IMG/VR virus record: IMGVR_UViG_3300044680_000280
Span: 186,001-250,000 of that record
Direction: 5' to 3' (one strand)
Length of the DNA stretch: 64,000 nt
Part shown: positions 29,802 through 56,464 of the stretch, in pieces
Numbering within the stretch: the first letter of the stretch is position 1
Layout of the letters: each line of letters begins with the position of its first letter
Notes under the pieces: generated by a model
The model's input: only the letters and a program-made list of their open reading frames with translations
Told to the model about the DNA's origin: nothing
The model's database searches: none
Program-made: the position numbers and the translations under genes

Positions 29802-29824
29802 CCCCAAGCAGGTTGAAAAGACCT

Positions 29825-30379
29825 TTAGCCGAGACGTGAGCCGTCTGGAACCCCTGGGCACGAAGCGAGGATGACTCGACCGTCCTCCGACTGGGCCGCG
29901 ACAAGCATCCCGTGGGATACTTGACCCATCATCTTACGAGGCGGTAGATTACAAACGGCGATGACCGACATGCCGACAATGTTTTCGACCGTGTAACTCT
30001 TGGCAATACCAGCCAAGATGGTGCGCGACCCCTCCGAGCCGAACGAAACCATGAGCTTTAGGAGCTTGTCACTCTTAGGTAACTCATACGCGCCCGTAAC
30101 CGTCCCCGTACGAAGCTCGACCCGCTGAAAAGTAGCAAAGTCGACGAACCCGTCTTTTAGGTCGGGCTGCTCGTTTTCTTCTTCCTTGTTCTCGTGCACT
30201 GCCCGAAGTCCGCCCGCGAAGCCGTTCACCTGGTCGCAGAACTCCTGTTTTTGCTCCGGAGTTGCACTTGCGAGGAACGCTCGAAAAGCGTCCGCAACGG
30301 GCGTCTTACTGCAAGTGGGAGCCTCCTCGGTGGAAGGAACGGCGCCTGCATTTTGATTGGTTGTGGAGCCCATGTTCAC
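29825..30379 (-). CDS. Trbp111/CsaA/MetRS-C-like tRNA-binding OB-fold protein
   Basis: FQRVELRTG, SDKLLKL, RTILAGI, NLPPRKMMGQVSHGM. Confidence 0.88.
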   Translation of the reverse strand: MNMGSTTNQNAGAVPSTEEAPTCSKTPVADAFRAFLASATPEQKQEFCDQVNGFAGGLRAVHENKEEENEQPDLKDGFVDFATFQRVELRTGTVTGAYELPKSDKLLKLMVSFGSEGSRTILAGIAKSYTVENIVGMSVIAVCNLPPRKMMGQVSHGMLVAAQSEDGRVILASCPGVPDGSRLG

Positions 30380-32294: not shown

Positions 32295-33932
32295 TCACCA
32301 GCTCTTGCGAGACTGCTTCTTGGACTTTTCTTTTTTACAGACGTGTTTCGCTTCGTGTGTTGGGGACGGGTCAGGTTCAGAGTGGGCCGATGGGTCTACA
32401 CCGAAGAAATCGAACGAACTAACCGGGGTAAGCGGAGGCATCCCGATGGTCAAAGTTCCGACACCGGGATCGGGTATGAATGATTGCACCATATGCAGCG
32501 GAGGAGACGGGTGCACCATCATTTCCACGAATGTTTCTTGAATGGCTGGTTGAACGATCGCTGGTTGAACAGTAACTCCAGCGAACGCGTTGGACGTGTT
32601 CGTCGTGGTCGTTGTGTTCATTTGGACCCCGAGGTTCGCGAGGTCGCTATCCGCACCGCCCGCGTAGCAGGAAACCCCAAGACCGCGCGAAGCCCCGTTC
32701 TGGAAGCTCCGTAGGTAACTGGCGTTCTGAACGTACTTGTCCGCACTGTCGACGCTAGAACCGAGCTTCCTGGAGACCGCCGCAAGGCTCAGAAGACCCC
32801 GCGAGCCGAAATCAGCGGCTTTGGCCGCCATGATGTCAGCGGCCGCCTGATAGGAGCCCTTCTTGGCGGCTTCCTCAGCTTCAATTTGAGCTCGAACAAG
32901 TTGAGCCAATCCAACGATGGCGTCGAGACTGGGATCCGGTTTCGACTCGAGGTCCTCCTTGCGAACGAACTGAGCCTTAACCTTGGTCTCTTCCGTGTGA
33001 TCGTGCTTCTTACCTTGAGCGTCGAATGTTTGGTACGTTGCATGCAAGTCGAAGACATTCACGGCACGAGGACCGTGGGTCTTCTGCTTGGCGAGTCGAA
33101 CCGCAACGACAATGTGACGAGCCTCCTCAGCAAGAAGGTCAGGGATCTGGATGTGAACCTCCCCCGTGCTGTCGTTGTCGTCCACGTCAACGTCAGAAAC
33201 GACCGAATTAATGACGTGTCCGCTTGTGGGCTTCAAGTAGAGGTCAATGTTTGTCGCGTAGGTCGAGATGAGTCCGCCGAGTTCCGTACCGAACGCCTTG
33301 AGAGCTTTGTCCGGGTTTTCGACATGGGCGTAATTACCCTTCCCCTCCCGAGCAAACTCCGTAAGAAGATTAGAGTCGAATTCCCCCTGTGTGTTGGAGC
33401 CATACCCGAAGGCACTGCACGTGACGTGCTCACGGTTCGACGTGAGTAGATTAATGATGTCCTTACTGGTCTTCGCGGGACCGACGTTGGCCGCGCCGTC
33501 CGTCAACATGATGACACGGTGAATGTAGTCTCCGCCGATATCGAGCGCCTTGAGTAGCTCGAGACTCATGAGTAGGCCGCCCGAAAAATTCGTCATGCCG
33601 TCCGCCTTGAGTCCGGCAACAACCTTTCTGAGGGCATCCTTGTCTCTGACCCGAGCGGGGGCGAACGCCGTGCTCGCCTTGGAACCAAAAGTCACGATTC
33701 CAAGAATGTCGTCGTGCTTCAGATGCTCGATGATCTTGAGGGCACTCTGCTTGACGTACTCGAGTTTCTCACCCGCCATAGAGCTACTGACGTCAACACA
33801 AAGAACCATCGCCAGCTTTGGGCGAGTCTGTTCAACGTCAACCGGGGGAGCCGTCAGACTGACGACAAGGTGGGTTGTGTTTTCATCATCGAAATGGAAT
33901 TTGTTGGTGACAAGACGTGCTTCGAGTTTCAT
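32295..33932 (-). CDS. vWA domain protein
   Basis: MIDAS DVSSSM, TNF, MLTDG. Confidence 0.85.
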   Translation of the reverse strand: MKLEARLVTNKFHFDDENTTHLVVSLTAPPVDVEQTRPKLAMVLCVDVSSSMAGEKLEYVKQSALKIIEHLKHDDILGIVTFGSKASTAFAPARVRDKDALRKVVAGLKADGMTNFSGGLLMSLELLKALDIGGDYIHRVIMLTDGAANVGPAKTSKDIINLLTSNREHVTCSAFGYGSNTQGEFDSNLLTEFAREGKGNYAHVENPDKALKAFGTELGGLISTYATNIDLYLKPTSGHVINSVVSDVDVDDNDSTGEVHIQIPDLLAEEARHIVVAVRLAKQKTHGPRAVNVFDLHATYQTFDAQGKKHDHTEETKVKAQFVRKEDLESKPDPSLDAIVGLAQLVRAQIEAEEAAKKGSYQAAADIMAAKAADFGSRGLLSLAAVSRKLGSSVDSADKYVQNASYLRSFQNGASRGLGVSCYAGGADSDLANLGVQMNTTTTTNTSNAFAGVTVQPAIVQPAIQETFVEMMVHPSPPLHMVQSFIPDPGVGTLTIGMPPLTPVSSFDFFGVDPSAHSEPDPSPTHEAKHVCKKEKSKKQSRKSW

Positions 33933-34960: not shown

Positions 34961-35509
34961 TCAGCCCGTTCCCGCGACATATCCCGCCGCCTCAAGGTAC
35001 GGAAGCATCCGGGGATGCGGATTCCGCAGATTGAAAATAGGGGACGTCATCGGCAACGTCTTCGGCTTGTACGGCTTCCTCAGAAGTTTCATTCCCGCCT
35101 GCTCGGGCGTTCGACGATCCTTCTTGGTATTGCACCTGTAGCAACTCGCAACAATATTTTCCCAGGTCGTTTGACCGCCCTGGTGCCTAGGCCGAACGTG
35201 ATCGTAGTTCAGTTGCCCCATCTCGAATTGCTTTCCGCAGTACTGACAACGAAATGCGTCTCGAGTGAAGACGTTGACTCGGCTGAACTTGATGCCCTTC
35301 TTGAAACCGTCGACATTTCGAATCAACCGAACAACCATGGGCATCCCGAAAGAAACACGCGGATTCGTCTCGGACCCCGCCGATGAGATGACCTCATCGT
35401 AAGTCTCGAGAAGATCGCACTTGCCCTGAACGTAGTCGAGAGCTGCTTCTTGCCAAGGGATTAGCCTATGTGGGCTCATCCATGGGGTTAAAATTAACGT
35501 ATGGTTCAT
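34961..35509 (-). CDS. HNH endonuclease (McrA-like)
   Basis: RDAFRCQYCG, DHV.P...GG.TTWEN..SCYRCN. Confidence 0.9.
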   Translation of the reverse strand: MNHTLILTPWMSPHRLIPWQEAALDYVQGKCDLLETYDEVISSAGSETNPRVSFGMPMVVRLIRNVDGFKKGIKFSRVNVFTRDAFRCQYCGKQFEMGQLNYDHVRPRHQGGQTTWENIVASCYRCNTKKDRRTPEQAGMKLLRKPYKPKTLPMTSPIFNLRNPHPRMLPYLEAAGYVAGTG

Positions 35510-35608
35510 TTTTGAGCCTCCTTTCATGGGCTTAGCGTTTAGTATTCACTACGTGGATGGGTGATTCAATCCGTAATCGCACAACGGCACGATGCCATAA
35601 CGAGAACA

Positions 35609-35686
35609 TAGTGCTCGAGGAGGGATTCGAACCCTCACTGTACCGGCTTTAAGGCGGCCGCCTCCTGCCAATTGGGCTACACGAGC
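35609..35686 (-). tRNA. tRNA-Leu(TAA), short variable loop
   Basis: Cloverleaf, no V arm. Confidence 0.8.
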
Positions 35687-35687
35687 A

Positions 35688-35764
35688 TAGTGCTCACGGC
35701 GAGATTCGAACTCGCACTGAACGCTTTTTGAGGGCGTCGACTCCTGCCGTTGGTCTACGTGAGC
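35688..35764 (-). tRNA. tRNA-Leu(CAA), short variable loop
   Basis: Cloverleaf, no V arm. Confidence 0.82.
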
Positions 35765-35769
35765 GTTGT

Positions 35770-35979
35770 TCAAGAGTGATGATGCACGAAGCGGTGTCTT
35801 CGCATCAGGGCGACCCGTACTGCCGCCGCAGGGGAGAAGAACTTCCTCTTCTGCCACTTGGGTTCTGAAAACAGAGCCAAAGCAGCCGTGGCGACCGTGT
35901 TCTTCTGAGCGGTCGTCAAAGTCGGAGCTCTTTGATCGACAATGACCAAGAGTTCGGAGAGAGTCGGAGTGGTCATCAA
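35770..35979 (-). CDS. hypothetical protein
   Basis: GAGGAG RBS, coupled to upstream gene. Confidence 0.6.
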   Translation of the reverse strand: MMTTPTLSELLVIVDQRAPTLTTAQKNTVATAALALFSEPKWQKRKFFSPAAAVRVALMRRHRFVHHHS

Positions 35980-38597
35980 GCAATCTCCTCAATGCTAAAC
36001 CAGGGGTACATCGGAGCGGCGGCCATCTCACCCAAGGCTGTAAAACCACCGTTGTAAGTGATCACCACCTCAACGAGTCCAGGAGACCCACTGGTTTGAT
36101 AGTACCCAACGCACGGAGCCCCCGTGGCATGATCCCCAGCGGTCGGAGGAGACCCTTGCTGCCCATCGTCCAATCTTGTACCAACACCGATCGAACTGCC
36201 ATTATTAGCATCACGCCACTCGAAATAGATGGCGCCCTGTCCAACACCTTCGTTCGGAGAAAACGTCAACTTGTATGTATGATTCGCAGCGAGCGTGATT
36301 CGTCCGATACTCGGAGCACCCAGAGTCGTTGTGTACGATGAACTCGAGTCCAGGGCGATGTCTGAACCGACGGAGAAATACGACGAATTGAACTTGACGT
36401 GATCCCCGGCACTCAAATTGGTTGACTGAGTCGAACTTACGTAGCCATGAACGACATTCAGGATTGGGTTCTGCCACGAAGCCGTGCCCTCCCCAGTTGC
36501 CACAAGCGTCTGCCCAACCGCGGTCGGACCCGAACCCTGAACAACCGCTAACGTCGCGGGCACCCAAGCACTACCATTCCACCAATAGGGCTGTGTAGAG
36601 CTCTCGTCGTAATACATCATTCCTTCTTGAACGTTGCCGGGGTAGAACCCGCTCTCGTACAGGGCGGTCGTAATCACGTTGAGTCCGGCCATCGTGGCGC
36701 CCGTGGACGATGGGCCCGTAAAGGTCGCAGTCAGTATAAGGTGTGTTCCGTCTACCAGAGACGAGATCGTGTAGTTTCCCGAAACCGTCGGGGAACCGCC
36801 ACTAAAGGTGACCTGCTGCCCGACGGTAAACTCAGACGTCGAACCGCTGGTCAAAGTGACCTCAGCGTTTCCGGTCGTCACATCGACGGTAACCGACGGG
36901 GGTACGCCAGTGTAATTCTCATTCAAGTAGACCGTGTTACCACCAACCTCTGAAACTTTATACACAACACCGGGTTGAGAGGCAAAGATCAGATTGACGT
37001 TGTTTCCGCTCCAACTCGTTTGGGCGACCGACGCAGTAACTATGTTGGAGTTGTACTGAACGGTAAAGGTGCCGCTGGCGGTACCAGCATTAGACGGCTG
37101 AGGAAAAGATCCGGAGCCAGAAAATGGTGTCAATGCCGAGGCCGAGGAACCCTGCCAATACACATTAATCCCTCCCGAATAATACGGAAGGAAAGGAAAC
37201 GGATTCGAAAGGTCCCCGTAGTAGGGCCCCTGCATGTAAAACTGGAATGAAGTACCGAACGACGATGGGGTACCGGCGACAAAACTGTCATCGAAGAAGT
37301 TGTACTGTGTTGTCAGGATGTAGATATCCCCTCCCGTGCCAGCATTGGATCCGCAGTTGATAAACGCGGTGGTGGCCGAACTGTCCGATCCTGCGTAGCC
37401 GCCAGATCCTATCGTAAGGTACACAAATGGCGCGTACAAACTGACGTCGAAAATACCGCCATTGTAGTCCACCGCCATAACCGAATTTTCGTCTATGGTC
37501 ATCATAGGCGGTAGCTGAGACGGTGTTCCAAGAAAGAGTTGATTGCTGAACTCCGTAAGAGCAACAAGGCCGCCAGTGATATGAAGGAAACCCTCATTCC
37601 AGGTGTTGCCGTCGTAAATACCGATGTAAGTGGAGAACTCTTCCGTTGGGGTACTTCCGGTGAGAGTAATCTGAGAGAGGTTGTAGTCGAACCCGAGAGT
37701 CCAACAGATGGTCCCGTTGGCCTCGTCGGGCGTCACGGCGTTAACGTTCGTAACCTGGACCGAAGTGGCAGAAATGTAATTGGTGATTACGAACGTACCG
37801 TTGTTGCCACCGTTCGAGACATTCGTGAACGTAATGACTTTACCAACGTCACCTGAAACTATCCCACTCAGCCCCGTAATCGTAGCAAGGGTGCCATCGA
37901 AAGCGGTGACGGAGGCGGACGCGACTCCCTGAGTGTACCAACCGATTTCCCCATTATTGGCATCGTCGGCGACCGCAGATGCATTCGCAACGATTACCGA
38001 AGACGGAGAGAGTACCTCAACTATGGGGAATGTCCCGTTGTTGCCAGAACTCGCCGCCGCATAGACCACAAGAGTCTGTCCCACCAAGGGGGCGATCATA
38101 CTGGACATGCCCGTGATGGTCATGTTTCCGCCAGAAACGGTTGTGATCGAAGCAGTGCCACCCTCCCCGCTCGTGGGAAGGAGCTGGATCATACAATCGT
38201 CGATCGAATCATCGATGACGATTGTCGACGGAATTCCCGTCTCCGTGATCGAAGACTGCGCCGCTGTGTAAGCGTCATAGAAGGTGGCGAACACGTTTCC
38301 ACTGGGTGTCGCCCCCTGACGGTAAACGAAGGTGTTACTGCTACTACTGCCAGAAGGGCCCTCGGGTCCTTCTGGTCCAGTTGCACCAGTTGCCCCCGTT
38401 GCACCCGGGGAACCGGGCGGTCCCTGTTGTCCAGTTGCACCTTGTGGCCCCTGCGGGCCTGGGGGACCAGGAGGACCAGCTACTCCCGGGGGACCTCTGA
38501 AATTGGCATCATTCACACTGTACCCGCGGAATGAATTGTTTAAAGACGAGGTCGTAAAATTCGTACCCGGCGTCTTAGGTCCGTAAGCGTTCCCCAT
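35976..38597 (-). CDS. collagen-repeat fibre/appendage protein
   Basis: Gly-X-Y run near N-terminus; repeated beta modules (GNNGTF.I). Confidence 0.75.
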   Translation of the reverse strand: MGNAYGPKTPGTNFTTSSLNNSFRGYSVNDANFRGPPGVAGPPGPPGPQGPQGATGQQGPPGSPGATGATGATGPEGPEGPSGSSSSNTFVYRQGATPSGNVFATFYDAYTAAQSSITETGIPSTIVIDDSIDDCMIQLLPTSGEGGTASITTVSGGNMTITGMSSMIAPLVGQTLVVYAAASSGNNGTFPIVEVLSPSSVIVANASAVADDANNGEIGWYTQGVASASVTAFDGTLATITGLSGIVSGDVGKVITFTNVSNGGNNGTFVITNYISATSVQVTNVNAVTPDEANGTICWTLGFDYNLSQITLTGSTPTEEFSTYIGIYDGNTWNEGFLHITGGLVALTEFSNQLFLGTPSQLPPMMTIDENSVMAVDYNGGIFDVSLYAPFVYLTIGSGGYAGSDSSATTAFINCGSNAGTGGDIYILTTQYNFFDDSFVAGTPSSFGTSFQFYMQGPYYGDLSNPFPFLPYYSGGINVYWQGSSASALTPFSGSGSFPQPSNAGTASGTFTVQYNSNIVTASVAQTSWSGNNVNLIFASQPGVVYKVSEVGGNTVYLNENYTGVPPSVTVDVTTGNAEVTLTSGSTSEFTVGQQVTFSGGSPTVSGNYTISSLVDGTHLILTATFTGPSSTGATMAGLNVITTALYESGFYPGNVQEGMMYYDESSTQPYWWNGSAWVPATLAVVQGSGPTAVGQTLVATGEGTASWQNPILNVVHGYVSSTQSTNLSAGDHVKFNSSYFSVGSDIALDSSSSYTTTLGAPSIGRITLAANHTYKLTFSPNEGVGQGAIYFEWRDANNGSSIGVGTRLDDGQQGSPPTAGDHATGAPCVGYYQTSGSPGLVEVVITYNGGFTALGEMAAAPMYPWFSIEEIA

Positions 38598-38738: not shown

Positions 38739-39104
38739 TAGTGGACCCGCCGAGAATTGAACTCGGGTCCGAAAGATCGTCCTGATCACCCTCGTTACGT
38801 GCGTAGTCGGCTTGAGGCAACCGACGGCCTTGCGGGAAATGGGTGAGTTGACCCGCGTCTCAGCAACCTAATGTGTCCCCAGCTCACCGATTGCGAGGTG
38901 GCTGTATGCCTCGTGTGGGTTGACGACCCGTTGTCCGATACTCGAAGTCCTCTCGGACGGGTCGCCGATCAGGCCGCGATGGCGAGATCGGGGATGCCGT
39001 TGTCGTTGGCTGGTGTTTTCGCCTCGATTTGATTAAGCCGGGTCGAAGGAGCCCGCCTACACGCAGATGGTCGTTCTGTTCCTCCGTCGAAACCTGTCAG
39101 GCCC
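38739..39104 (-). ncRNA. ssrA: tmRNA, tag (A)ANDNGIPDLAIAA
   Basis: 5' GGGCCTGACAGGTTTCGAC; tag ORF ANDN...LAIAA*; 3' T arm and G3:U70 Ala acceptor. Confidence 0.93.
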
Positions 39105-42212: not shown

Positions 42213-42288
42213 TAGCCTCCACGCCGTGAGTCGAACACGGTGCAGCATCCTTCGCACGGATGAGCCAGGAATCCGCCTGGACGTGGAG
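42213..42288 (-). tRNA. tRNA-Arg(GCG)
   Basis: CATCC-GTGCGAA-GGATG anticodon arm. Confidence 0.75.
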
Positions 42289-42365
42289 AGTTGTGCCCCC
42301 GATTGCCGGTCGGATGGGAGCGGGTACTTTCGTCCCCCGAGGGGACCCGGTAGGTTATGAACCCC

Positions 42366-42978: not shown

Positions 42979-43050
42979 TGGTGTCTCTGCCCGAAGTCGA
43001 ATCGGGTAGCCAACCTTCGGAGAGTCGGCGCGGGATCCGCCCGCAGAGAC
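42979..43050 (-). tRNA. tRNA-Arg(CCG), reduced D arm
   Basis: Loop CTCCGAA, CCA. Confidence 0.72.
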
Positions 43051-48337: not shown

Positions 48338-48351
48338 GGTAACCTCCTAAA

Positions 48352-48431
48352 TGGTGGACGAGTCGAGATTCGAACTCGACAGCGGAATAGAGTGAGCACT
48401 CCAGAGCCACCCCACTGCCCCATGGCCGCCC
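48352..48431 (-). tRNA. atypical tRNA with CAC anticodon and Ala-like acceptor
   Basis: GGGCGG/TCGTCC-A-CCA, 6-bp T stem, loop CTCACTC. Confidence 0.55.
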
Positions 48432-48442
48432 ATACTTTATTG

Positions 48443-49395: not shown

Positions 49396-49521
49396 CGCCC
49401 GGTTTCCGATTCGAACGGAAAGCTTGTGCGGACTGTCGAAGAGCCCCTTTTTATGGGGGCGAGGAACAGACCTGGGTATCTCTAAACCAAAGAGGTGGGG
49501 AACCATTCCCCTATACCGGGC
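49396..49521 (-). ncRNA. tRNA-mimic RNA 1 with large variable-arm module
   Basis: GCCCGGT/ACCGGGC acceptor, D hairpin, TTCCG-TTCGAAT-CGGAA T arm, conserved insert. Confidence 0.7.
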
Positions 49522-49572
49522 ATAATTACTGCATCGTGACATCTCTGGGGTACGTGCACTATATCATGAAGG

Positions 49573-49989
49573 TTACATCCTAACCTTTCGTGTCTTCATG
49601 GCATGACAAAGTACACAAAGCAACTGTAAGTTGGTCATCGAGTTATTAGTCCGATCTCCGTCTATGTGATCAGCATCTAGTAGTGCCACAGGTACAAGGA
49701 TCCCTGCGATTCGCAGTTTGCACTGTGGACTTGCACACTCATTGGGCAAGTTCTGTAGCGCGAGCCTTCGGTACCCAATCGAGTTTCCATGTACAAAACG
49801 ACCGTGCTCTGGACCTGAGTGATAGACCTTATAGTTAAGATTATTGTATGTGTTCCGGCACGTTGTGTCGCAAAACACGTTTTGCGTTTTGCGTTTCTTT
49901 CTGCGCAACTGTGACACTAACGTACGGACCGGCTTACCGCACTGAGCGCATGGCAACACTATCGGAGGTAGTCTTTTACGTACTGACAC
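49573..49989 (-). CDS. HNH endonuclease with N-terminal zinc finger
   Basis: CAQCGK..FCDTTC; DHIDGDRTNN..NLQLLC..CH. Confidence 0.88.
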   Translation of the reverse strand: MSVRKRLPPIVLPCAQCGKPVRTLVSQLRRKKRKTQNVFCDTTCRNTYNNLNYKVYHSGPEHGRFVHGNSIGYRRLALQNLPNECASPQCKLRIAGILVPVALLDADHIDGDRTNNSMTNLQLLCVLCHAMKTRKVRM

Positions 49990-50030
49990 AGGGAAAGTAA
50001 GGGAATACGTTCGAGGTGTAGGGCGGAGTT

Positions 50031-50107
50031 TGGTTGCAATGGCGGGATTTGAACCCGCTACTTCCGGCTTCCAAGGCTGGCGCTCTATCCTGATGAGCTA
50101 CGTTGCG
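50031..50107 (-). tRNA. tRNA-Pro(TGG)-like with C1:A72 mismatch
   Basis: Loop CTTGGAA, T arm, CCA. Confidence 0.7.
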
Positions 50108-50138
50108 TGTGCGACCTACGAATTGAACGTTTTCCCAG

Positions 50139-50267
50139 GGCCGGGTGATGGATTCGAACCATCCGAGCGTGTGGACACCCATGGTGACTCCCGTCTGAGG
50201 GGAGCGAGGTTGGAAGTCGGTTATGATTCCCTATTGAGAGGAAGCGGGACCCAAGTCCCTACCCGGC
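50139..50267 (-). ncRNA. tRNA-mimic RNA 2 with large variable-arm module
   Basis: GCCGGGT/ACCCGGC acceptor, GGGAC/GTCCC D arm, GATGG-TTCGAAT-CCATC T arm. Confidence 0.7.
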
Positions 50268-50323
50268 ATACGATGACGAACTTCAAGGCGTCGTACTGTG
50301 CCTTCCCCTGATGGGGAAAATTT

Positions 50324-50470
50324 CCCTTCCGCGTTCGAGTAGCTATGGCTGAAATTGCTTTGTTCGTTTTGCAGACGAATGCCTTACCACTTGGCGACAA
50401 TCCCCAATGGGGATCGATGGGATTCGAACCCACGAATGCTTGTGAGCCACAACAGAGAAACGCGAGAAGG
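50324..50470 (-). ncRNA. circularly permuted tRNA mimic (YrlA/Y-RNA-like)
   Basis: Order T arm, closed acceptor CGATCCCC-ATT-GGGGATTG, D arm, GCA anticodon arm; enclosed by long terminal stems. Confidence 0.75.
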
Positions 50471-50473
50471 TAG

Positions 50474-50613
50474 AGGGGAGTCCTGGATTCGAACCAGGTG
50501 AGCTTGTAGGAGCTACGAGGGTCCCTTTCTAGGGGGACGAGGTGCAGCGCCGGAATTTTGCCGAAGAAGGCATCTGATTTTTGGTCAGACTGGGACCCAG
50601 TCCCAAACTCCCC
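50474..50613 (-). ncRNA. tRNA-mimic RNA 3 with large variable-arm module
   Basis: GGGGAGT/ACTCCCC acceptor, GGGAC/GTCCC D arm, CCTGG-TTCGAAT-CCAGG T arm. Confidence 0.7.
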
Positions 50614-50670: not shown

Positions 50671-50699
50671 AATCTACATTGCTTCCCCCGAATCGTCAA
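50671..50699 (-). promoter_or_regulatory. sigma70-type promoter for the tRNA-mimic cluster
   Basis: TTGACG-N17-TAGATT. Confidence 0.6.
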
Positions 50700-50717: not shown

Positions 50718-51293
50718 TCAAATGACGAGAAGGCTCGAGGGACTGATGCTGTACCCGACCTTCTTGCCCTTGGTCAAAAACACCTTGGCCGCGTGGGCGA
50801 GATAGGACGAAACGATGGAGATGAACGGAAGGTGCTCCCCGTCCTCGCAGGTTGCCCCGCCGACAGAGCCCTCATCGTCGATGACGAATGACTCGTCCCA
50901 GACGACCCGGCCGAACTCACCGTTAGCGGAAAGAGCTCCGTGCAAGCACGGGATGCCCTGCTTGCGAACGTAGCCCTGAATGATCCGGCGACCTTCCCCG
51001 TTGTCGAGGCAATCGACAACAAGACTCGAACCCCCGAGGAGCGCATGAACGTTGTCGGCGATGAGCTTATTTGGGTTTTGCTCGATCTTGCGAGCGAAGA
51101 GAAAATGCATCGTCTGCGCGAGAGACTGAACCTTCAGCTTGCCGACGCTCGACTTGCCGTGGAACTGGCTCTGCGTGTTCTTCTGCTCCACGCGATCCAT
51201 GTCGATGACGAGAAGAGTCGCGTCCACGTTTCGAAGAAGCTGGACGGCGTGGGACCCGAGAGCCCCAACGCCGACGATGGTGACGCGCCCCAT
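50718..51293 (-). CDS. ThiF/E1-like adenylating enzyme
   Basis: IVGVGALGS, DMDRVEQKN..SQ, VVDCLDN, candidate catalytic ATCE. Confidence 0.88.
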   Translation of the reverse strand: MGRVTIVGVGALGSHAVQLLRNVDATLLVIDMDRVEQKNTQSQFHGKSSVGKLKVQSLAQTMHFLFARKIEQNPNKLIADNVHALLGGSSLVVDCLDNGEGRRIIQGYVRKQGIPCLHGALSANGEFGRVVWDESFVIDDEGSVGGATCEDGEHLPFISIVSSYLAHAAKVFLTKGKKVGYSISPSSLLVI

Positions 51294-51294
51294 C

Positions 51295-51582
51295 TCAGAC
51301 GGAGCCGAAGGGGGTTTTCGGTCGGAGATGGATGAGCTGAAAGGGCCGAACGTCGTTCGGAGCGAAACGGTCAACGACGTAGTCGGTGAAGTTTGCGTTC
51401 GCGTCGGCATTGATCCCCGGGACGGTGCCCGTGCGGACCGCTTCCGAGACGAGCCGCCTGACTTCCGTGTCCGACGAATCGAACGGAATCGGAGATACGA
51501 GGTCTCCCGTCTGACCTGCCCACGTCACGTTGACGCGCGCCTCGTGTGCGAGCACTTCCTGGTAAACTTGAACTTGGTCCAT
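51295..51582 (-). CDS. ubiquitin-like (beta-grasp) protein
   Basis: 95 aa between JAB and E1; C-terminus LRPKTPFG-SV. Confidence 0.65.
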   Translation of the reverse strand: MDQVQVYQEVLAHEARVNVTWAGQTGDLVSPIPFDSSDTEVRRLVSEAVRTGTVPGINADANANFTDYVVDRFAPNDVRPFQLIHLRPKTPFGSV

Positions 51583-51600: not shown

Positions 51601-51990
51601 TCATTGCCCGCGTTGCTGCGAGCGAAGTCGTAGTTCGTCGATCCACGTGTACCGTAGAGATTCACGCGGAGAGAATATCGTGTAGTCGTAAGGTCCGGGA
51701 CCTTCCCACCGTGCGAGTATGTACCGATCCGCACTGGTAATCCACCAAAAAAGGCGGATGCCGAGACCGAGTTCCACGGCCGAAAAAGTTGTGAGGTCCG
51801 TCCCCGACGGTTCGGGGATCCCGCTGCCAGGATGACTGTGCGCGAAACCCGAAAGGTTGTGCCGGTTTTCCCAGAGCACATCCCAAAGGTCGCGGCTGTC
51901 GGCAAGATGAGTCGGTCCTCGGTCTAAAGGCTCGTGCCAATAGATCGGTTTCCTATCGAGATCGACAACAACGCCCGCTTCAATAGACAT
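51601..51990 (-). CDS. JAB/JAMM metallo-isopeptidase
   Basis: N-terminal Glu (IEAG) and HSHP...PSGTD. Confidence 0.85.
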   Translation of the reverse strand: MSIEAGVVVDLDRKPIYWHEPLDRGPTHLADSRDLWDVLWENRHNLSGFAHSHPGSGIPEPSGTDLTTFSAVELGLGIRLFWWITSADRYILARWEGPGPYDYTIFSPRESLRYTWIDELRLRSQQRGQ

Positions 51991-52032: not shown

Positions 52033-52950
52033 TCAACGAAAGACGACGAGAACTCCCAGAGCTTGAGCCTCCAAGATTACACCGGGAAGTGATTCGAGCG
52101 TAAAGAGGCGGTCGTTCTCTCGCCCAGCGAGGCAGACGCCCGCGTCAACGATCCGTAGGTTCATGTCGCAGACACACTCGAATCGTCGGGCGGAAAGACG
52201 AAATGTAACGATCATCTCCCCACGGTTCGTGCTGTTGTGATGGTCCAGGTATTCAGCTCCCCCGACGGCAAGAGCGGAACGAGCTGCCTCCCCGAAGTCG
52301 AGCCGTGCCGCCTCGCGGCGACCGACCGAGCTTCCGAGCTGGCCAAAAATCCTCTGACGTTCTTCCTCACGTACTCGACGCTCTTCTTCCTCTCGAGCGA
52401 TACGAGCAAGTTCTTCGCGGCGCCTCTGGGCTTCGAGCCGCTGGTAGACCGCCATGCGAAAGGAGGCATCCAACGCAGGTGGAACCCCACGAATGTTGTC
52501 CACAGACGTGATCCCGTCCTGAAAAGCGCGGTTGACGTCATCCTCGAGACCAAGGGGCATCTCCTGGTTGGCGTAAATGAGTGATCCGTCCTCGTACATA
52601 CGACCCACTCGAACACGAGCAAAACGATCGAGCCCGAGTTCGATCAGATGAACCTGCTCTGACTGACGGGCAATGTCCTCGGGAGATGGGTTGCACGGAG
52701 CATCGTCTACCACGAAGCGATCTCCAACAAGGTATCCCGTGTAGGTCTTACCGAGTACCTCGGGAGATGGATCGCACGGACCATCGATCCGGGCCTCTCG
52801 GTTCTTCAACCGAAAACGAAACCACCCAAACTCCCGAGGCAGTCGACCCTGAATGTTCCACGTACGAGCGTTGAGGCGGAGGACCCGTCCACCGACCCAA
52901 GGCGAGACGAGAGTCTCATCCTCAGTTTGCAGTAGGTCTTTCCACCCCAT
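52033..52950 (-). CDS. putative E2-like protein with coiled-coil linker
   Basis: C-terminal IVDAGVCL resembles the E2 G-x-V/I-C-L active site; operon context. Confidence 0.5.
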   Translation of the reverse strand: MGWKDLLQTEDETLVSPWVGGRVLRLNARTWNIQGRLPREFGWFRFRLKNREARIDGPCDPSPEVLGKTYTGYLVGDRFVVDDAPCNPSPEDIARQSEQVHLIELGLDRFARVRVGRMYEDGSLIYANQEMPLGLEDDVNRAFQDGITSVDNIRGVPPALDASFRMAVYQRLEAQRRREELARIAREEEERRVREEERQRIFGQLGSSVGRREAARLDFGEAARSALAVGGAEYLDHHNSTNRGEMIVTFRLSARRFECVCDMNLRIVDAGVCLAGRENDRLFTLESLPGVILEAQALGVLVVFR

Positions 52951-52968: not shown

Positions 52969-54834
52969 TCAGGAAGCCCAAACGGGCTTCTCGAGTAGTT
53001 TTGTACGCAAAATTTCGTCAATCAGTGTCACACGAACGACAGGGGTCGACCGTGTTGTTTGTCCGACCGGCGTCGAGCTGACGAGAGCTCGAATCGTACG
53101 AGGAATCGCGTACGGATCCGCAAAGATCCGTTCGTCGATCATGAGACACGGAATTCCGAGAGCCGCGGCCGCACTCGTAATGGCCCCGTAGTTCTCTCCC
53201 GGCACTTCCAGCCACCCGAAGGCGACAGGATTGATGCCCGTGGTTCGAACGGCCGAAACGAACTTCGTCACGTCGCGCTCCCCACCGTCGCCGACGAAAA
53301 GGAAAATGGCATCCTCGTCAGCCCCGGGCTTCAGGTCGTTGAGCACTCGAACGCCCTCCGAGTGCAAGGTGCCGCCGTTTGCCCTGATGTTGAGGAAGGC
53401 GTTCTCGACGCCCGCCGTCGACGGATGACGAATGGTTACGATTCGTCCGACCGTGTTGAAGACCACGACGTGCAGTTTTTCGAGGGGAAACCCCTGAAGA
53501 AACCGACTGATGTAGGTCTTCGCGACCTGGATCGAAGTGTGCATCGATCCAGAGATGTCGACAATGACGTAGATGACGAGGCCCTTGACCGCCGCTGCGA
53601 CTTCACGTTGAAGCGCCTGGTCGGACGCCTCGACGAGCTTCTCAGCAACCTCTCTCGACTTGACGCGGAGGGCAATGTTCGCCGCCCTCATGTCCGTCGC
53701 CGTCTTCATCGCCTGCTCCCAACGAGCCTTGACCGTGGAGTCCTCGAGCAGTCCGAGCTCCTCGATCGTCGGAGTCAAGATACGAATGTCCTTGTCGGAC
53801 AAAGATCCGGCCTCGATGGAAGCCGCCATGATGGCGCGCGTGATGCCCATCTTCGGGGGAACGAGACCGCAGATGCGCTTGTAGTCGGGTCGATCCTTGA
53901 GGATGCGTTGGCAAATCTCGACTTCCGTCAGACCCTCCCACGATTCAGCGGGAGCAACATCCTGCCCGATGCGCATGACGCGGCGACCGTCCTTCGCCTG
54001 AGCCTGCTTCCAGCGAAGGATCTCGAAGAACGATGGCTTGGCGGGACGGTACCCGACGCGCCGAGCGAGCTCCATGACCGTTCGACGGTAGCCCTTTTTG
54101 ACGAGGCCCTGAAGGAGCTTCGGGTTTTCCTCGCGATAGAGCAGCCACTTGGTGACCGCCTTCTCCCAACGACCGAGGAAGGGAGTCCGCGCCGACTTGC
54201 CGAACCCAAGCTCACGGTTAATCGCCGCGACCTGGGGAAGCGTGAGGATCTCGTAGATGCGAACGAGGTCCTTGGCTCGGAGCGCGTGCTCGTCCTTGCT
54301 CGAGTACGTCAGAAGCATCGCCTCACCGACGTCCCGGAAATCTTCGTCGTGGAAGAGAACCTTCCCACCGTCGACGATCGGGTCACCCTTACGGTTTTGG
54401 ACGAGCATGAACGCCGCGAGGATGTCCTTGAGGTCGCGGTGCTCCTTGGTGAACTGGTAGCTCGCCCAACGTGCGGCGAACTCACTGTCCAGCTTCCAGA
54501 CCTCGGCGACCTGGCCATACATCCACGCAACGACCTCGGGAAAGAGCCCCGCCGGACGGTAGTGACTGACGACCTGACCGCGTTCGTTCCTGATCTCGCC
54601 GTTCTCGGCAAGGATACCGACACGAACTTTGACCGTCTTTTTGCCAGCCTTGTCGAGGCGATAAACGACCTTTTGCCCGTCTTCGACCTTGTGCGTCACG
54701 GGCTCCCAACGAACGCCGACGTTGAAGCGCGCGTCCGGAACGATTTGGCCCGGTCTGTTGTGCACCGCGTGGTCTTGGTACGTCAAAAGGGCTTGGATGA
54801 TTCGATCCGCTGCTCCCAGGTTTTCGTTGTTCAT
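52969..54834 (-). CDS. TROVE/Ro60-like helical domain plus C-terminal vWA
   Basis: vWA MIDAS DISGSM, GGT, VGDG; helical N-region with MELARRVGYRP and SWE recalling TROVE motifs. Confidence 0.6.
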   Translation of the reverse strand: MNNENLGAADRIIQALLTYQDHAVHNRPGQIVPDARFNVGVRWEPVTHKVEDGQKVVYRLDKAGKKTVKVRVGILAENGEIRNERGQVVSHYRPAGLFPEVVAWMYGQVAEVWKLDSEFAARWASYQFTKEHRDLKDILAAFMLVQNRKGDPIVDGGKVLFHDEDFRDVGEAMLLTYSSKDEHALRAKDLVRIYEILTLPQVAAINRELGFGKSARTPFLGRWEKAVTKWLLYREENPKLLQGLVKKGYRRTVMELARRVGYRPAKPSFFEILRWKQAQAKDGRRVMRIGQDVAPAESWEGLTEVEICQRILKDRPDYKRICGLVPPKMGITRAIMAASIEAGSLSDKDIRILTPTIEELGLLEDSTVKARWEQAMKTATDMRAANIALRVKSREVAEKLVEASDQALQREVAAAVKGLVIYVIVDISGSMHTSIQVAKTYISRFLQGFPLEKLHVVVFNTVGRIVTIRHPSTAGVENAFLNIRANGGTLHSEGVRVLNDLKPGADEDAIFLFVGDGGERDVTKFVSAVRTTGINPVAFGWLEVPGENYGAITSAAAALGIPCLMIDERIFADPYAIPRTIRALVSSTPVGQTTRSTPVVRVTLIDEILRTKLLEKPVWAS

Positions 54835-55942: not shown

Positions 55943-56464
55943 ATGTTCGCGTTGTTTGCTGCGATAGGCACATTTCTGTACGGAACGCTCGCAGGGTGGG
56001 GAATTCACAAAGCAATACACCAGCGATGGGCGGGTCGATTCTACCGAGCCCATATGACACACCACGTCAAACTTTATCCTCCGCTCGACCTCGTGTCAGA
56101 AAAATACCGCAGCGCGGGCAAGGACAATTCGAACCTGGTTTTCATCCCCGCGATTACCGTCGCGTTCGCGGCACTCGAGTTCCTCATGTGGAAGATCGGC
56201 GCCTCAGTCGGCACTCTCGTCATGTTGGTGATCGAGGGCATCATCATAGGAGCACTGCACGACCTCATGCATACGTGGTTTCACTTGAGCGGAACTCGAC
56301 TGCTCAAATACGAGTGGTTCCAGAGGTTGAAGCGTTATCACTTCTACCATCATCATCACATGCAGCAAAACTTCGGAATCATCTGGTTCGGTTGGGACCG
56401 CGTATTCGGAACCTTTCGGAACCGAGGGCGGTTGGTGGGACAGACGGGAGTCGAACCCGCTTAG
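55943..56464 (+). CDS. fatty-acid hydroxylase/sterol desaturase-family membrane protein
   Basis: His boxes HKAIH, HMTHH, HDLMHTWFH, HFYHH; NFG...WDRVFGT. Confidence 0.85.
   Translation: MFALFAAIGTFLYGTLAGWGIHKAIHQRWAGRFYRAHMTHHVKLYPPLDLVSEKYRSAGKDNSNLVFIPAITVAFAALEFLMWKIGASVGTLVMLVIEGIIIGALHDLMHTWFHLSGTRLLKYEWFQRLKRYHFYHHHHMQQNFGIIWFGWDRVFGTFRNRGRLVGQTGVEPA

What the first reader, a model, noticed from the sequence alone, without database searches (positions are those of the whole stretch)
49396..50613. Family of three tRNA-shaped RNAs with a conserved oversized variable-arm module
Seen: 49396-49521, 50139-50267 and 50474-50613 each have a perfect 7-bp acceptor, a compact D hairpin, an anticodon-position hairpin and a TTCGAAT T arm. 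Between the anticodon hairpin and T arm all carry the same module: an 8-bp stem with one pyrimidine mismatch (GGTCTGTT/GACAGTCC; GACTTCCA/TGGGTGTC; GGCGCTGC/GTAGCTCC), an internal loop with conserved CCTC(G), a 5-bp hairpin (GCCCC/GGGGC; CTCCC/GGGAG; GTCCC/GGGAC), then ACA(A/C)GC before the T arm. Stem sequences differ while pairing is kept, which indicates selection on structure. A TTGACG-N17-TAGATT promoter lies upstream. Inference: a new ncRNA class, such as protein-binding tRNA mimics or anticodon-nuclease decoys.
Basis: seen in the sequence. Interest (0 to 1): 0.88.

Follow-up and report, generated by a model that had tools for sequence, protein, structure and literature searches.

The report
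Phage tRNA-shaped RNAs with docking arm
Three genes in a 407-kb phage encode RNAs with a complete tRNA body plus a conserved extra two-helix arm; they belong to a large, undescribed RNA family of huge phages that sits beside a Ro60-like protein gene and most likely acts as a protein-docking tRNA mimic related to bacterial Y RNAs.

Summary
All three elements have the described acceptor, D, anticodon-position and T arms, plus the 8-bp stem / CCUC loop / hairpin / ACA(A/C)GC module. ARAGORN and Rfam call none of them.

They are not a chance trio. A covariance model of the module finds more than 100 copies in tandem arrays on about 38 huge-phage contigs. Pairing is 89.5% against 63% in shuffles, with 333 compensatory cells against 106. 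Sixty of 62 tested copies have a perfect 7-bp acceptor. C74 or an encoded CCA follows the discriminator, as in the phage's ordinary tRNAs.

A fourth copy at 50325-50470 is a circular permutation: the acceptor is closed and the ends form the distal helix. It resembles YrlA Y RNAs, and similar copies recur in other arrays.

The arrays adjoin a conserved operon: a 621-aa helical+VWA protein whose model best matches Ro60, an unknown 305-aa protein, a JAB peptidase, a small protein ending RPKTPFG, and an E1/ThiF-like enzyme.

Best reading: Y-RNA-like tRNA mimics that dock the Ro60-like protein through the arm. This is inferred, not shown. They may also be charged tRNAs or nuclease decoys. I rate it a new variant of a known kind.

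The parts
50474..50613 (-). E3: tRNA-type RNA, 140 nt. Acceptor GGGGAGU/ACUCCCC, compact D hairpin, hairpin with loop CCAAAAA, extra small hairpin, docking arm, T arm 50482-50498, discriminator U at 50474.
   Evidence: (74.6 bits)
50509..50551 (-). E3 arm. P1 GGCGCUGC (50544-50551) pairs with GUAGCUCC (50509-50516). Single-stranded CCUC is at 50539-50542, hairpin P2 at 50521-50538. UACAAGC follows at 50502-50508.
50325..50470 (-). E4: circularly permuted sibling (Y-type), 146 nt. Order 5' to 3': 12-bp terminal helix with a bulged U (5' strand), P1 strand, CACAAGC, T arm 50417-50433, closed acceptor hairpin GAUCCCC-AUU-GGGGAUU, canonical D arm, hairpin with loop CUGCAAA, P1 strand, CUACUCGAA loop, terminal helix (3' strand). 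It starts 3 nt after E3 ends.
   Evidence: Rfam YrlA 19.8 bits for T-AS-D; tRNA 35.2 bits for D+AC; 25.8 bits
50139..50267 (-). E2: tRNA-type RNA, 129 nt. Acceptor GCCGGGU/ACCCGGC, D hairpin GGGAC-UUGG-GUCCC, loop CUCAAUA, arm, T arm 50147-50163, discriminator C.
   Evidence: (64.1 bits)
50174..50218 (-). E2 arm. P1 GACUUCCA (50211-50218) pairs with UGGGUGUC (50174-50181). CCUC is at 50206-50209, P2 at 50187-50205. CACACGC follows at 50167-50173.
49396..49521 (-). E1: tRNA-type RNA, 126 nt. Acceptor GCCCGGU/ACCGGGC, D hairpin, loop UUGGUUU, arm, T arm 49404-49420, discriminator G.
   Evidence: (59.5 bits)
49430..49472 (-). E1 arm. P1 GGUCUGUU (49465-49472) pairs with GACAGUCC (49430-49437). 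CCUC is at 49461-49464, P2 at 49443-49460. ACAAGC follows at 49422-49427.
50671..50699 (-). Sigma-70-like site TTGACG-17-TAGATT upstream of E3. It is a possible array promoter, but the match is weak.
   Evidence: 9 of 12 positions; 2 sites found against 1.0 expected
50031..50107 (-). Ordinary tRNA-Pro(UGG) embedded in the array, 31 nt after E2.
49573..49989 (-). HNH endonuclease-like ORF (138 aa) inserted between tRNA-Pro and E1.
50718..51410 (-). E1/ThiF-like adenylyltransferase. Homologues start near residue 38-42, so the true start is probably about 51296. It is the last gene before the RNA array.
51295..51582 (-). Conserved 95-aa protein ending RPKTPFG plus 0-2 residues. It is a candidate ubiquitin-like modifier or sulfur carrier; this is inferred from context only.
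   Evidence: no Pfam or PDB match
51601..51990 (-). JAB/MPN (JAMM) metallopeptidase, 129 aa.
   Evidence: E..HxH..S..D motif; Prok-JAB in 11 of 11 homologues
52033..52950 (-). Conserved 305-aa protein of unknown fold.
   Evidence: pLDDT 85.8; no significant PDB match
52969..54834 (-). Ro60-like protein, 621 aa: N-terminal beta domain, helical repeat region, C-terminal VWA domain with a DxSGS MIDAS motif.
   Evidence: (Foldseek top 8 hits are Ro60/TROVE, E = 4e-8); Pfam detects only the VWA domain

Best explanation
E1, E2 and E3 are genes for tRNA-derived small RNAs of a family specific to huge phages.

Each RNA keeps a complete tRNA body that can be processed: a G1-C72 7-bp acceptor, D-loop GG and a T-loop GUUCGAAUC elbow, a 7-nt anticodon-like loop, and C74 or CCA after the discriminator. 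In place of the variable loop each carries a conserved arm. The arm is an 8-bp helix, a 5x5 internal loop with single-stranded CCUC, a second helix closed by G-C, and then YACA(A/C)GC.

The arm is a protein-docking module. Its most likely partner is the Ro60-like (helical repeat + VWA) protein encoded 2.4 kb upstream in the same conserved operon. In this reading the RNAs are Y-RNA-like adaptors. The arm holds the Ro60-like protein, and the tRNA body presents it to, or baits, proteins that recognise tRNAs.

The permuted copy E4 has a closed acceptor, and its termini form the distal helix. It is the same adaptor without a free CCA end, and it is the form closest to bacterial YrlA.

Shown: the structure, its conservation, the two topologies, the tRNA-like 3' trailers, and the synteny. 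Inferred: binding to the Ro60-like protein, and everything downstream of that.
For: - Structure and selection. There are 62 modules at 89.5% pairing against 63.3% in shuffles, with 333 double-change cells against 106 (0 of 500 shuffles reach this). Slid controls give at most 49%. Acceptor pairing is 99.8% against 58%.
- The tRNA body is kept. G1-C72 occurs in 56 of 61 copies. The anticodon-like loop has C32 71%, U33 65%, A37 76% and A38 74%. C74 occurs in 56 of 61 copies and encoded CCA in 13 of 61, compared with 28 of 28 and 9 of 28 in the window's ordinary tRNAs.
- The permuted sibling keeps P1, the CACUC(G) loop and P2 as its terminal stem. It is found next to E3 and in many other arrays. 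RNAalifold on 12 copies gives 26 of 35 pairs with compensatory change. Its T arm, closed acceptor and D arm give a weak Rfam YrlA match. E4 has CGAA in the loop next to its 5'-3' stem, which is the operational mark of phage and bacterial Y RNAs (PMC4201824, PMC12135203).
- Synteny. The order Ro-like, p305, JAB, small protein, E1-like, RNA array is found on the same strand in 17 loci. A second arrangement has the RNAs directly upstream of the Ro-like gene in 5 loci. Twenty-seven of 37 RNA loci show cassette genes in the stretch fetched.
- The AF2 model of the 621-aa protein has mean pLDDT 77.7. Its eight best PDB matches are all Ro60/TROVE structures, including a Thermus phage Ro60, over 518-566 aligned columns at E = 4e-8 to 3e-6. 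BFVD gives full-length matches to viral helical+VWA proteins, one of them named TROVE.
- The RNAs duplicate anticodons already served by ordinary tRNAs in the same phages. This argues for an adaptor or mimic role, not a need for decoding capacity.
Against: - No binding data exist.
- The Ro60 assignment rests on fold only. TM-scores are about 0.3, the whole-model pTM is 0.45, Pfam finds no TROVE domain, and a PDB sequence profile finds only the VWA domain. VWA-only hits are only about 100-fold weaker than the Ro60 hits.
- The arm is not the canonical Ro60 site. It lacks GNCGAAN0-1G, it leaves the body at the variable position instead of the anticodon position, and its conserved strand has the opposite orientation relative to the terminal helix.
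- About a quarter of the arrays show no cassette gene in the DNA fetched.
- Anticodon loops are conserved within orthologous groups, and the discriminator base fits the three largest groups: GUA with A73 in 6 of 6, UCC with U73 in 5 of 5, GUU with G73 in 2 of 2. Together with the CCA signal, this points to real tRNA functions that a pure scaffold would not need.
- The roles of the JAB, small-protein and E1-like genes are unexplained by this model.
Confidence: 0.55

Rival explanations
1. They are working, aminoacylated tRNAs of an unusual 'class III' type. The giant variable arm is an identity or protection element, for example for a dedicated charging or modifying enzyme. They take part in translation alongside the phage's ordinary tRNAs. 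This can coexist with docking of the Ro60-like protein.
For: - The tRNA body is complete and the anticodon loop has the tRNA consensus.
- The C74/CCA trailers match those of the ordinary tRNAs.
- Loop types are conserved across phages and have the cognate discriminator: GUA/A73, UCC/U73, GUU/G73.
- The genes are embedded in tRNA gene clusters.
Against: - U33 is present in only 65% of copies, and G33 is conserved in the Tyr-like group.
- E1 and E2 have U37 and E3 has C33.
- Several loops have 8 nt, and D arms are mostly non-canonical.
- Anticodons are redundant with ordinary tRNAs of the same phage.
- Other groups carry a non-cognate discriminator.
- The permuted sibling cannot be charged, yet it keeps the same arm.
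Confidence: 0.2
2. They are decoys or resistant spare copies aimed at host tRNA-cleaving defences such as anticodon nucleases and variable-loop nucleases. The altered loop positions and the bulky arm either soak up the nuclease or prevent cleavage.
For: - Each phage carries diverse anticodon-like loops, including types that are classic nuclease targets (Tyr, Asn, Asp, Lys, Arg, Met).
- The Tyr-like group has a conserved deviation at position 33.
- Phage tRNAs are known to evade tRNA-targeting defences (PMC11555353), and a defence that cuts the variable loop of tRNA-Tyr has been described (PMC13096335).
Against: - There is no direct evidence.
- It does not explain the strict conservation of CCUC and YACAAGC.
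- It does not explain the permuted form.
- It does not explain the linkage to the five-gene cassette.
Confidence: 0.12
3. The RNAs are substrates or cofactors of the adjacent E1-like / small protein (…PFG) / JAB module. One possibility is a tRNA-thiolation-type sulfur relay. Another is transfer of the adenylated protein C-terminus to or through the RNA. In either case the arm is the recognition element.
For: - The E1-like gene directly precedes the arrays in 17 loci.
- The E1-like profile matches MoeB, Uba4 and TcdA, which are enzymes of tRNA thiolation or t6A cyclisation.
- The small protein ends in a conserved Gly followed by 0-2 residues, and a JAB peptidase is encoded next to it.
Against: - No PP-loop thiouridine synthetase is recognisable, and p305 has no known fold.
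- The ubiquitin-like fold of the small protein is not shown.
- In the second arrangement the RNAs adjoin the Ro-like gene instead of the E1-like gene.
Confidence: 0.08
4. The arm is an intervening sequence that is removed to give ordinary tRNAs, or the elements are decaying tRNA pseudogenes.
For: The elements lie among tRNA genes, and standard finders miss them.
Against: - The arm's helices covary and its loop motifs are invariant in more than 100 copies.
- Removing P1-P2 would leave about 16 nt between the anticodon and T arms.
- There is no bulge-helix-bulge or group I signature, and no Rfam intron match.
- The permuted form uses the same arm as its terminal stem.
Confidence: 0.03

Closest known systems
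YrlA, the tRNA-like bacterial and phage Y RNA (Rfam RF02553; Chen et al. 2014, PMC4201824)
   Same: - It is a small RNA encoded within a few kb of a Ro60-type gene on the same strand.
- It has tRNA-like T and D arms with elbow nucleotides.
- The permuted copy E4 has the same T arm, closed acceptor hairpin and D arm order, and a 5'-3' terminal stem next to a loop containing CGAA.
   Different: - E1-E3 have an open 7-bp acceptor with a C74/CCA trailer and a real anticodon-type hairpin.
- The protein-docking stem leaves at the variable position, not the anticodon position.
- The motif is CCUC(G)/CACUC(G), not GNCGAAN0-1G near the 5' end.
- Rfam score is 19.8 bits against a threshold of 69 for E4, and there is no hit for E1-E3.
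- There are 3-7 copies per phage with different anticodon-like loops.
- The partner protein is not recognised as TROVE by sequence.
Thermus phage phiLo Ro60 with Yrl1 and Yrl2 (PMC12135203; PDB 9KOP, 9L5Y)
   Same: - It is a phage-encoded Ro60 homologue with Y-RNA-like genes beside it.
- 9L5Y and 9KOP are among the best structural matches of the 621-aa protein.
   Different: - Yrl1 and Yrl2 are simple stem-bulge-stem RNAs defined by CGAA. They are not tRNA-shaped.
- No JAB or E1-like genes are reported with them.
- There is no detectable sequence similarity.
Class II tRNAs (Ser, Leu, bacterial Tyr), tRNA-Sec and allo-tRNAs with long variable arms
   Same: - An extra helix emerges between the anticodon and T arms.
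- The compact D hairpin with a long stem and short loop recalls tRNA-Sec.
- Anticodons are diverse on one scaffold, as in allo-tRNAs.
   Different: - The arm here is 43-45 nt in E1-E3, with two helices, a conserved internal loop and long conserved linkers. In those tRNAs it is a single 3-7-bp hairpin.
- The acceptor/T geometry is 7/5, not 8/5, 8/4 or 9/3.
- The tRNA-Sec model scores 17.9 bits against a threshold of 47.
Circularly permuted tRNA genes and two-piece tmRNA
   Same: Two gene topologies exist for one fold. In the permuted form the T-arm half precedes the D-arm half.
   Different: Here the permuted form is closed at the acceptor by a 3-9-nt loop and open at the tip of the extra arm. 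It therefore cannot mature into an acceptor-ended tRNA. Both forms coexist side by side.

Membership tests
tRNA (Rfam RF00005; ARAGORN) | Recognised by the family model or finder | tested here: not met
   ARAGORN and Rfam at gathering threshold call none of E1-E3. No tRNA hit appears even at E <= 10. ARAGORN calls none of the family in 10 other loci.
tRNA (Rfam RF00005; ARAGORN) | 7-bp acceptor, D loop with GG, and T arm G53-U54-U55-C56-R57-A58..C61 | tested here: met
   Acceptor pairing is 99.8% in 61 copies, and the T loop is GUUCGAAUC or GUUCGACUC.
tRNA (Rfam RF00005; ARAGORN) | Anticodon loop of 7 nt with U33 and purine 37 | tested here: inconclusive
   Family-wide, U33 is 65% and purine-37 is 88%. 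In the window, E1 is UUGGUUU (U33, U37), E2 is CUCAAUA (U33, U37) and E3 is CCAAAAA (C33, A37).
tRNA (Rfam RF00005; ARAGORN) | Variable region of 4-5 nt (class I) or one hairpin of up to about 24 nt (class II) | tested here: not met
   There are 59-76 nt between the anticodon-position hairpin and the T arm in E1-E3, with two helices and conserved linkers.
tRNA (Rfam RF00005; ARAGORN) | 3' CCA end and aminoacylation | not testable with these tools
   Only indirect evidence is available. C74 occurs in 56 of 61 copies and encoded CCA in 13 of 61, which is like the ordinary tRNAs of the window.
YrlA Y RNA (Rfam RF02553) | Score at or above the gathering threshold (69 bits) | tested here: not met
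   E4 scores 19.8 bits over model positions 29-81 only. E1-E3 give no hit.
YrlA Y RNA (Rfam RF02553) | Encoded within about 4 kb of a Ro60 orthologue on the same strand | tested here: inconclusive
   The distance and strand criteria are met: the gene ends at 52969 and E3 starts at 50613, with synteny in 17+5 loci. However, the protein is Ro60-like only by predicted fold.
YrlA Y RNA (Rfam RF02553) | Closed 'acceptor' hairpin between the T and D arms, with the 5'/3' ends forming the Ro-binding stem | tested here: not met
   This is not met for E1-E3, which have an open acceptor and ends at the acceptor. It is met for the sibling E4.
YrlA Y RNA (Rfam RF02553) | GNCGAAN0-1G motif near the 5' end, with the terminal stem in the anticodon-stem position | tested here: not met
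   The motif here is CCUC(G) in E1-E3, and CACUCG(R) on the 3' strand in the Y-type copies. The stem leaves at the variable-arm position. The definition is taken from PMC4201824.
tRNA-Sec (Rfam RF01852) | Model score; 8-bp acceptor; UCA anticodon | tested here: not met
   E2 scores 17.9 bits against 47. The acceptor has 7 bp and there is no UCA anticodon.
Ro60 / TROVE protein (for the 621-aa neighbour) | TROVE domain detectable by sequence (Pfam PF05731) | tested here: not met
   Only VWA families are found in 12 of 12 homologues, even at E <= 10. A PDB sequence profile finds only the VWA domain. More than 1400 homologues carry only VWA annotations.
Ro60 / TROVE protein (for the 621-aa neighbour) | Helical-repeat domain followed by a C-terminal VWA domain with MIDAS; fold similarity to solved Ro60 | tested here: met
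   The AF2 model has helices at 99-415 and a VWA domain at 419-586 with a DxSGS motif. The Foldseek top 8 PDB hits are all Ro60/TROVE, with E = 4e-8 to 3e-6 over 518-566 columns, but TM is only about 0.3.
Ro60 / TROVE protein (for the 621-aa neighbour) | Closed ring that binds Y RNA on its outer face | not testable with these tools
   The model's pTM of 0.45 is too low to judge ring closure. There are no binding data.

The most novel reading that the evidence does not exclude
The arrays encode a set of anticodon-specific tRNA baits. Through the conserved arm they recruit a Ro60-like scaffold together with a ubiquitin-like conjugation module: the small protein ending in Gly, the E1-like enzyme, the JAB peptidase, and p305 as the transfer factor. 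The complex would tag or neutralise host proteins that bind particular tRNAs, such as anticodon nucleases or synthetases. Alternatively, the E1-like enzyme loads the small protein onto the CCA end of these RNAs. Either case would be an RNA-guided protein-modification system with no known counterpart.
Probability: 0.1. Interest if true: 0.95.

Novelty: new variant of a known kind. Interest (0 to 1): 0.78.

Why it matters
If the reading is right, huge phages carry a previously unseen branch of the Ro60/Y-RNA world. In it the Y RNA is a full tRNA look-alike with a free, tRNA-style 3' end and a choice of anticodon loops, and it exists side by side with a circularly permuted version.

- It gives a direct handle on an open question about Y RNAs, namely what the tRNA-like domain is for.
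- It links a Ro60-type protein to a ubiquitin-like/E1/JAB module for the first time in prokaryotic viruses.
- It shows that standard tRNA and Rfam annotation misses more than 100 structured RNA genes in published metagenomic phage genomes.
- The covariance model and the five-gene signature make the system easy to find and to reconstitute in E. coli.

Tried and rejected
- **Rfam and ARAGORN.** Rfam was run at gathering threshold and at E <= 10, and ARAGORN was also run. Neither places E1-E3 in any family. Only weak tRNA-Sec and YrlA fragments appear.
- **blastn against GenBank phages.** It finds only ordinary tRNA matches.
- **Whole-length MAFFT alignments of the RNAs.** They were not consistent with the structure at the 5' end or the anticodon arm. 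I therefore modelled the arm plus T arm with Infernal and analysed the tRNA body with a script.
- **The same DNA pattern in 596 Gb of bacterial and archaeal genomes.** It gave about 120 hits. Nearly all lack T-stem pairing or are ordinary 72-nt tRNAs. Only two 7-kb contigs binned with Myxococcota MAGs (L121, L123) are clear members, and both carry the phage cassette. The family is therefore not a cellular RNA.
- **Sequence tests of the Ro60-like protein.** Pfam, NCBIfam, PHROGs, phmmer and a profile against PDB see only the VWA domain.
- **p305.** The model is confident, but no PDB fold match has E < 0.1.
- **The 95-aa protein.** It has no Pfam or PDB match.
- **Anti-Shine-Dalgarno idea.** CACCUC in the arm could mimic the 16S rRNA anti-Shine-Dalgarno end. 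This was noted but not tested, and it has no support beyond the shared six bases.
- **Pairing of ACAAGC or CCUC with another part of the RNA.** I found no complementary conserved segment.
- **Arm as an intron.** Rejected; see the rival explanations.
- **Promoter.** The match is real but no better than chance.
- **Literature.** Seven searches found no description of this RNA type or of the cassette.
Full report
**Setting.** The window is part of a 406,734-bp phage contig (IMGVR_UViG_3300044680_000280; 100% match). Genes run on the minus strand. Replication and repair genes fill the first 32 kb: RecD2-like helicase, NAD-dependent ligase, ribonucleotide reductase, GroEL, RecA and clamp loader. 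From 32 to 60 kb there are 37 ordinary tRNA genes and a tmRNA gene. The three elements lie inside this tRNA region.

**The observation.**
- a perfect 7-bp acceptor;
- a compact D hairpin whose loop keeps GG;
- a hairpin at the anticodon position;
- a T arm with loop UUCGAAU.

Between the last two lies an 8-bp helix (P1) with one pyrimidine mismatch, then single-stranded CCUC, a hairpin (P2) closed by G-C or G-U, a 5-nt return strand, the P1 partner, and ACA(A/C)GC. MFE folding recovers this plan for E1 and E3 (z about -3.8) and partly for E2. ARAGORN and Rfam do not call them. The only traces at E <= 10 are a 17.9-bit tRNA-Sec match for E2 and matches that belong to a fourth element.

**A fourth, permuted member.** Between E3 and E2, Rfam gives two weak matches. 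One is a tRNA match for a D arm plus anticodon arm without a T arm (35.2 bits). The other is a YrlA match for T arm, hairpin and D arm (19.8 bits).

The region 50325-50470 (E4) folds as follows: terminal helix, P1 strand, CACAAGC, T arm, closed 8-bp 'acceptor' hairpin, canonical D arm, anticodon-type hairpin, P1 strand, CUACUCGAA, terminal helix. This is the same architecture as E1-E3 with two changes: the tip of P2 is opened to become the 5' and 3' ends, and the acceptor is closed. E4 begins 3 nt after E3 ends.

**Relatives.** A pattern taken from the three copies found 18 stretches in IMG/VR. Sixteen of them fold as complete tRNA-shaped RNAs with perfect acceptors, all on phage contigs of 40-620 kb.

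A covariance model of arm plus T arm (R1) then found 62 copies with E < 1e-6 in 23 sources. After a second pattern scan it found 47 more hits, some on contigs already counted. In all, about 38 IMG/VR contigs carry the family, in tandem arrays of 3-7 interspersed with ordinary tRNA genes.

The same pattern in 596 Gb of cellular genomes gave almost only chance matches or ordinary tRNAs. The clear exceptions are two 7-kb contigs binned with Myxococcota MAGs that also carry the phage cassette. GenBank phages hold one relative, Virus Rctr197k. It has an unannotated permuted copy and none of the tRNA-type copies in the 29 kb examined.

**Selection on structure.** On the 62-copy alignment:
- 89.5% of cells are paired, against 63.3% in shuffles;
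- 18 of 19 pairs show double changes;
- 333 cells carry compensatory changes, against 106 expected (0 of 500 shuffles reach this);
- sliding the partners drops pairing below 50%.

The alignment was fitted to the model, which inflates pairing somewhat, but the slid controls and the variety of pair types are unambiguous. Outside the model, 60 of 62 copies have a 7-of-7 acceptor. Acceptor pairing is 99.8% against 58% when the two strands are exchanged among members. For the permuted form, RNAalifold on 12 copies independently predicts P2, P1, T arm, closed acceptor, D arm and anticodon hairpin, with compensatory change in 26 of 35 pairs.

**How tRNA-like are they?** Very much so.
- G1-C72 occurs in 56 of 61 copies.
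- The 7-nt loop has the tRNA consensus: C32 71%, U33 65%, variable 34-36, A37 76%, A38 74%.
- The base after the discriminator is C in 56 of 61 copies, and CCA is encoded in 13 of 61. In the ordinary tRNAs of the window the figures are 28 of 28 and 9 of 28. Chance for CCA is 1 in 64.

They are therefore almost certainly matured like tRNAs.

Loop types recur across phages while the stems change: CGGUAAA (GUA) with A73, CUUCCAC (UCC) with U73, and CUGUUAA (GUU) with G73. These are the cognate discriminators for Tyr, Gly and Asn, which follows from established identity rules.

Against a plain decoding role:
- U33 is often absent, and G33 is conserved in the Tyr-like group.
- Some loops have 8 nt, and most D arms are non-canonical.
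- Other groups have non-cognate discriminators.
- The same phages carry ordinary tRNAs with the same anticodons.
- In the window itself, the loops of E1, E2 and E3 are the least tRNA-like.

**Genomic context.** Upstream of the arrays, on the same strand, five genes are conserved at 45-65% identity.
1. A 621-aa protein. Pfam sees only a C-terminal VWA domain with a MIDAS motif. Its AF2 model (pLDDT 77.7) has a helical-repeat region before the VWA domain. Its eight best PDB matches are all Ro60/TROVE structures aligned over almost the full length (E = 4e-8 to 3e-6), although TM-scores are only about 0.3. BFVD agrees.
2. A 305-aa protein with a confident model and no known fold.
3. A JAB/JAMM peptidase.
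4. A 95-aa protein ending RPKTPFG plus 0-2 residues.
5. An E1/ThiF-like adenylyltransferase, whose nearest solved relatives are MoeB, Uba4 and TcdA.

Seventeen loci show the complete order followed by the RNAs. Five show the RNAs directly upstream of the Ro60-like gene. Ten of 37 show no cassette gene in the DNA fetched.

**Interpretation.** Bacterial and phage Ro60 proteins are accompanied by Y RNAs encoded next to them. The YrlA subfamily mimics tRNA (PMC4201824), and a Thermus phage Ro60 binds two neighbouring Y-like RNAs (PMC12135203).

E4 and its orthologues fit that picture in outline. They have a 5'-3' stem, an adjacent internal loop (with CGAA in E4 itself), a tRNA-like T arm, closed acceptor and D arm, and they lie next to a Ro60-like gene. 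E1-E3 share the same arm, so the simplest account is that the arm is the docking site and the tRNA body is the functional 'head'.

I therefore read the finding as Y-RNA-like tRNA mimics in two topologies (confidence 0.55). The family nevertheless fails the formal YrlA tests:
- the score is far below threshold;
- the stem leaves at the variable position, not the anticodon position;
- the motif and its strand differ;
- E1-E3 have an open acceptor with a tRNA-style 3' end.

The Ro60 assignment is structural only. The CCA signal and the conserved anticodon loops mean that charging, or recognition by anticodon-specific proteins, remains a serious possibility. It may be part of the mechanism and not a rival to it. 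The JAB, small-protein and E1-like genes are unexplained. They suggest either a sulfur-relay type RNA modification or a protein-tagging activity coupled to the RNP.

**Novelty.** Seven literature searches found no description of tRNA-shaped RNAs with this arm, of the permuted pair, or of a Ro60-like gene joined to JAB, E1-like and a small Gly-ended protein. A survey of jumbo phages mentions only that a few encode a ROT/TROVE protein with a tRNA-like partner (PMC7824862). I rate it a new variant of a known kind. If the 621-aa protein turns out not to be a Ro60 relative, it would be further from anything known.

Noticed in passing
window 42983-43050 (-), 42214-42298 (-), 48349-48436 (-), 56430-56460 (-): Four more T-arm-containing, tRNA-like elements are not called by ARAGORN or Rfam.
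- 42983-43050 has a perfect 7-bp acceptor, a compact D hairpin, a 9-nt loop and an encoded ACCA.
- 42214-42298 has acceptor CUCCACG/CGUGGAG and loop GUGCGAA.
- 48349-48436 and the T arm at 56444-56460 are followed by ACCA.
None of them has the arm.
   Followed up: partly
window 38739-39104 (-): A phage-encoded tmRNA (Rfam 96.7 bits) with predicted tag ANDNGIPDLAIAA lies inside the tRNA region.
   Followed up: no
window 35611-35686 and 35690-35764 (-): tRNA-Leu(UAA) and tRNA-Leu(CAA) are only 75-76 nt long, so they lack the long variable arm expected of bacterial Leu tRNAs. The other three Leu tRNAs are 85-86 nt.
   Followed up: no
window 49573-49989 (-) and 34961-35527 (-): HNH endonuclease ORFs sit between tRNA-type genes. 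One splits the array between tRNA-Pro and E1. They are probably homing endonucleases.
   Followed up: no
window 32295-33932 (-), 35976-38597 (-), 28971-29861 (-): Three other ORFs stand out: a second VWA protein (545 aa, VWA at the N-terminus), an 873-aa protein with collagen-like repeats, and an ORF with an ART-PolyVal ADP-ribosyltransferase domain.
   Followed up: no
L153 about 3950-4170 (-) (Virus Rctr197k, KX853510.1): A published phage record holds an unannotated permuted (Y-type) copy with an extra hairpin between UACAAGC and the T arm. Its Ro60-like gene is annotated only as a misc_feature 'similar to conserved hypothetical protein'.
   Followed up: partly
L121 and L123 (7-kb contigs in Myxococcota MAGs): The only clear members in the cellular-genome collection are short contigs that carry the same cassette. 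They are probably phage fragments binned with Myxococcota, which gives a weak hint about the host.
   Followed up: no
L004 6703-6836, L009 4690-4830, L013 3912-4041, L025 7017-7151 and others: Several family members have 8-nt anticodon-position loops, for example AUUUAGGA and AUAUUGGA. One member (L002 1926-2059) has a canonical D arm and loop AUUUAGA, i.e. anticodon UUA, which would read the UAA stop codon.
   Followed up: no
arm of E2, E3 and many relatives: The single-stranded motif with its 5' neighbours often reads CACCUC. This is identical to the anti-Shine-Dalgarno end of 16S rRNA. The meaning is unknown and it may be coincidence.
   Followed up: no
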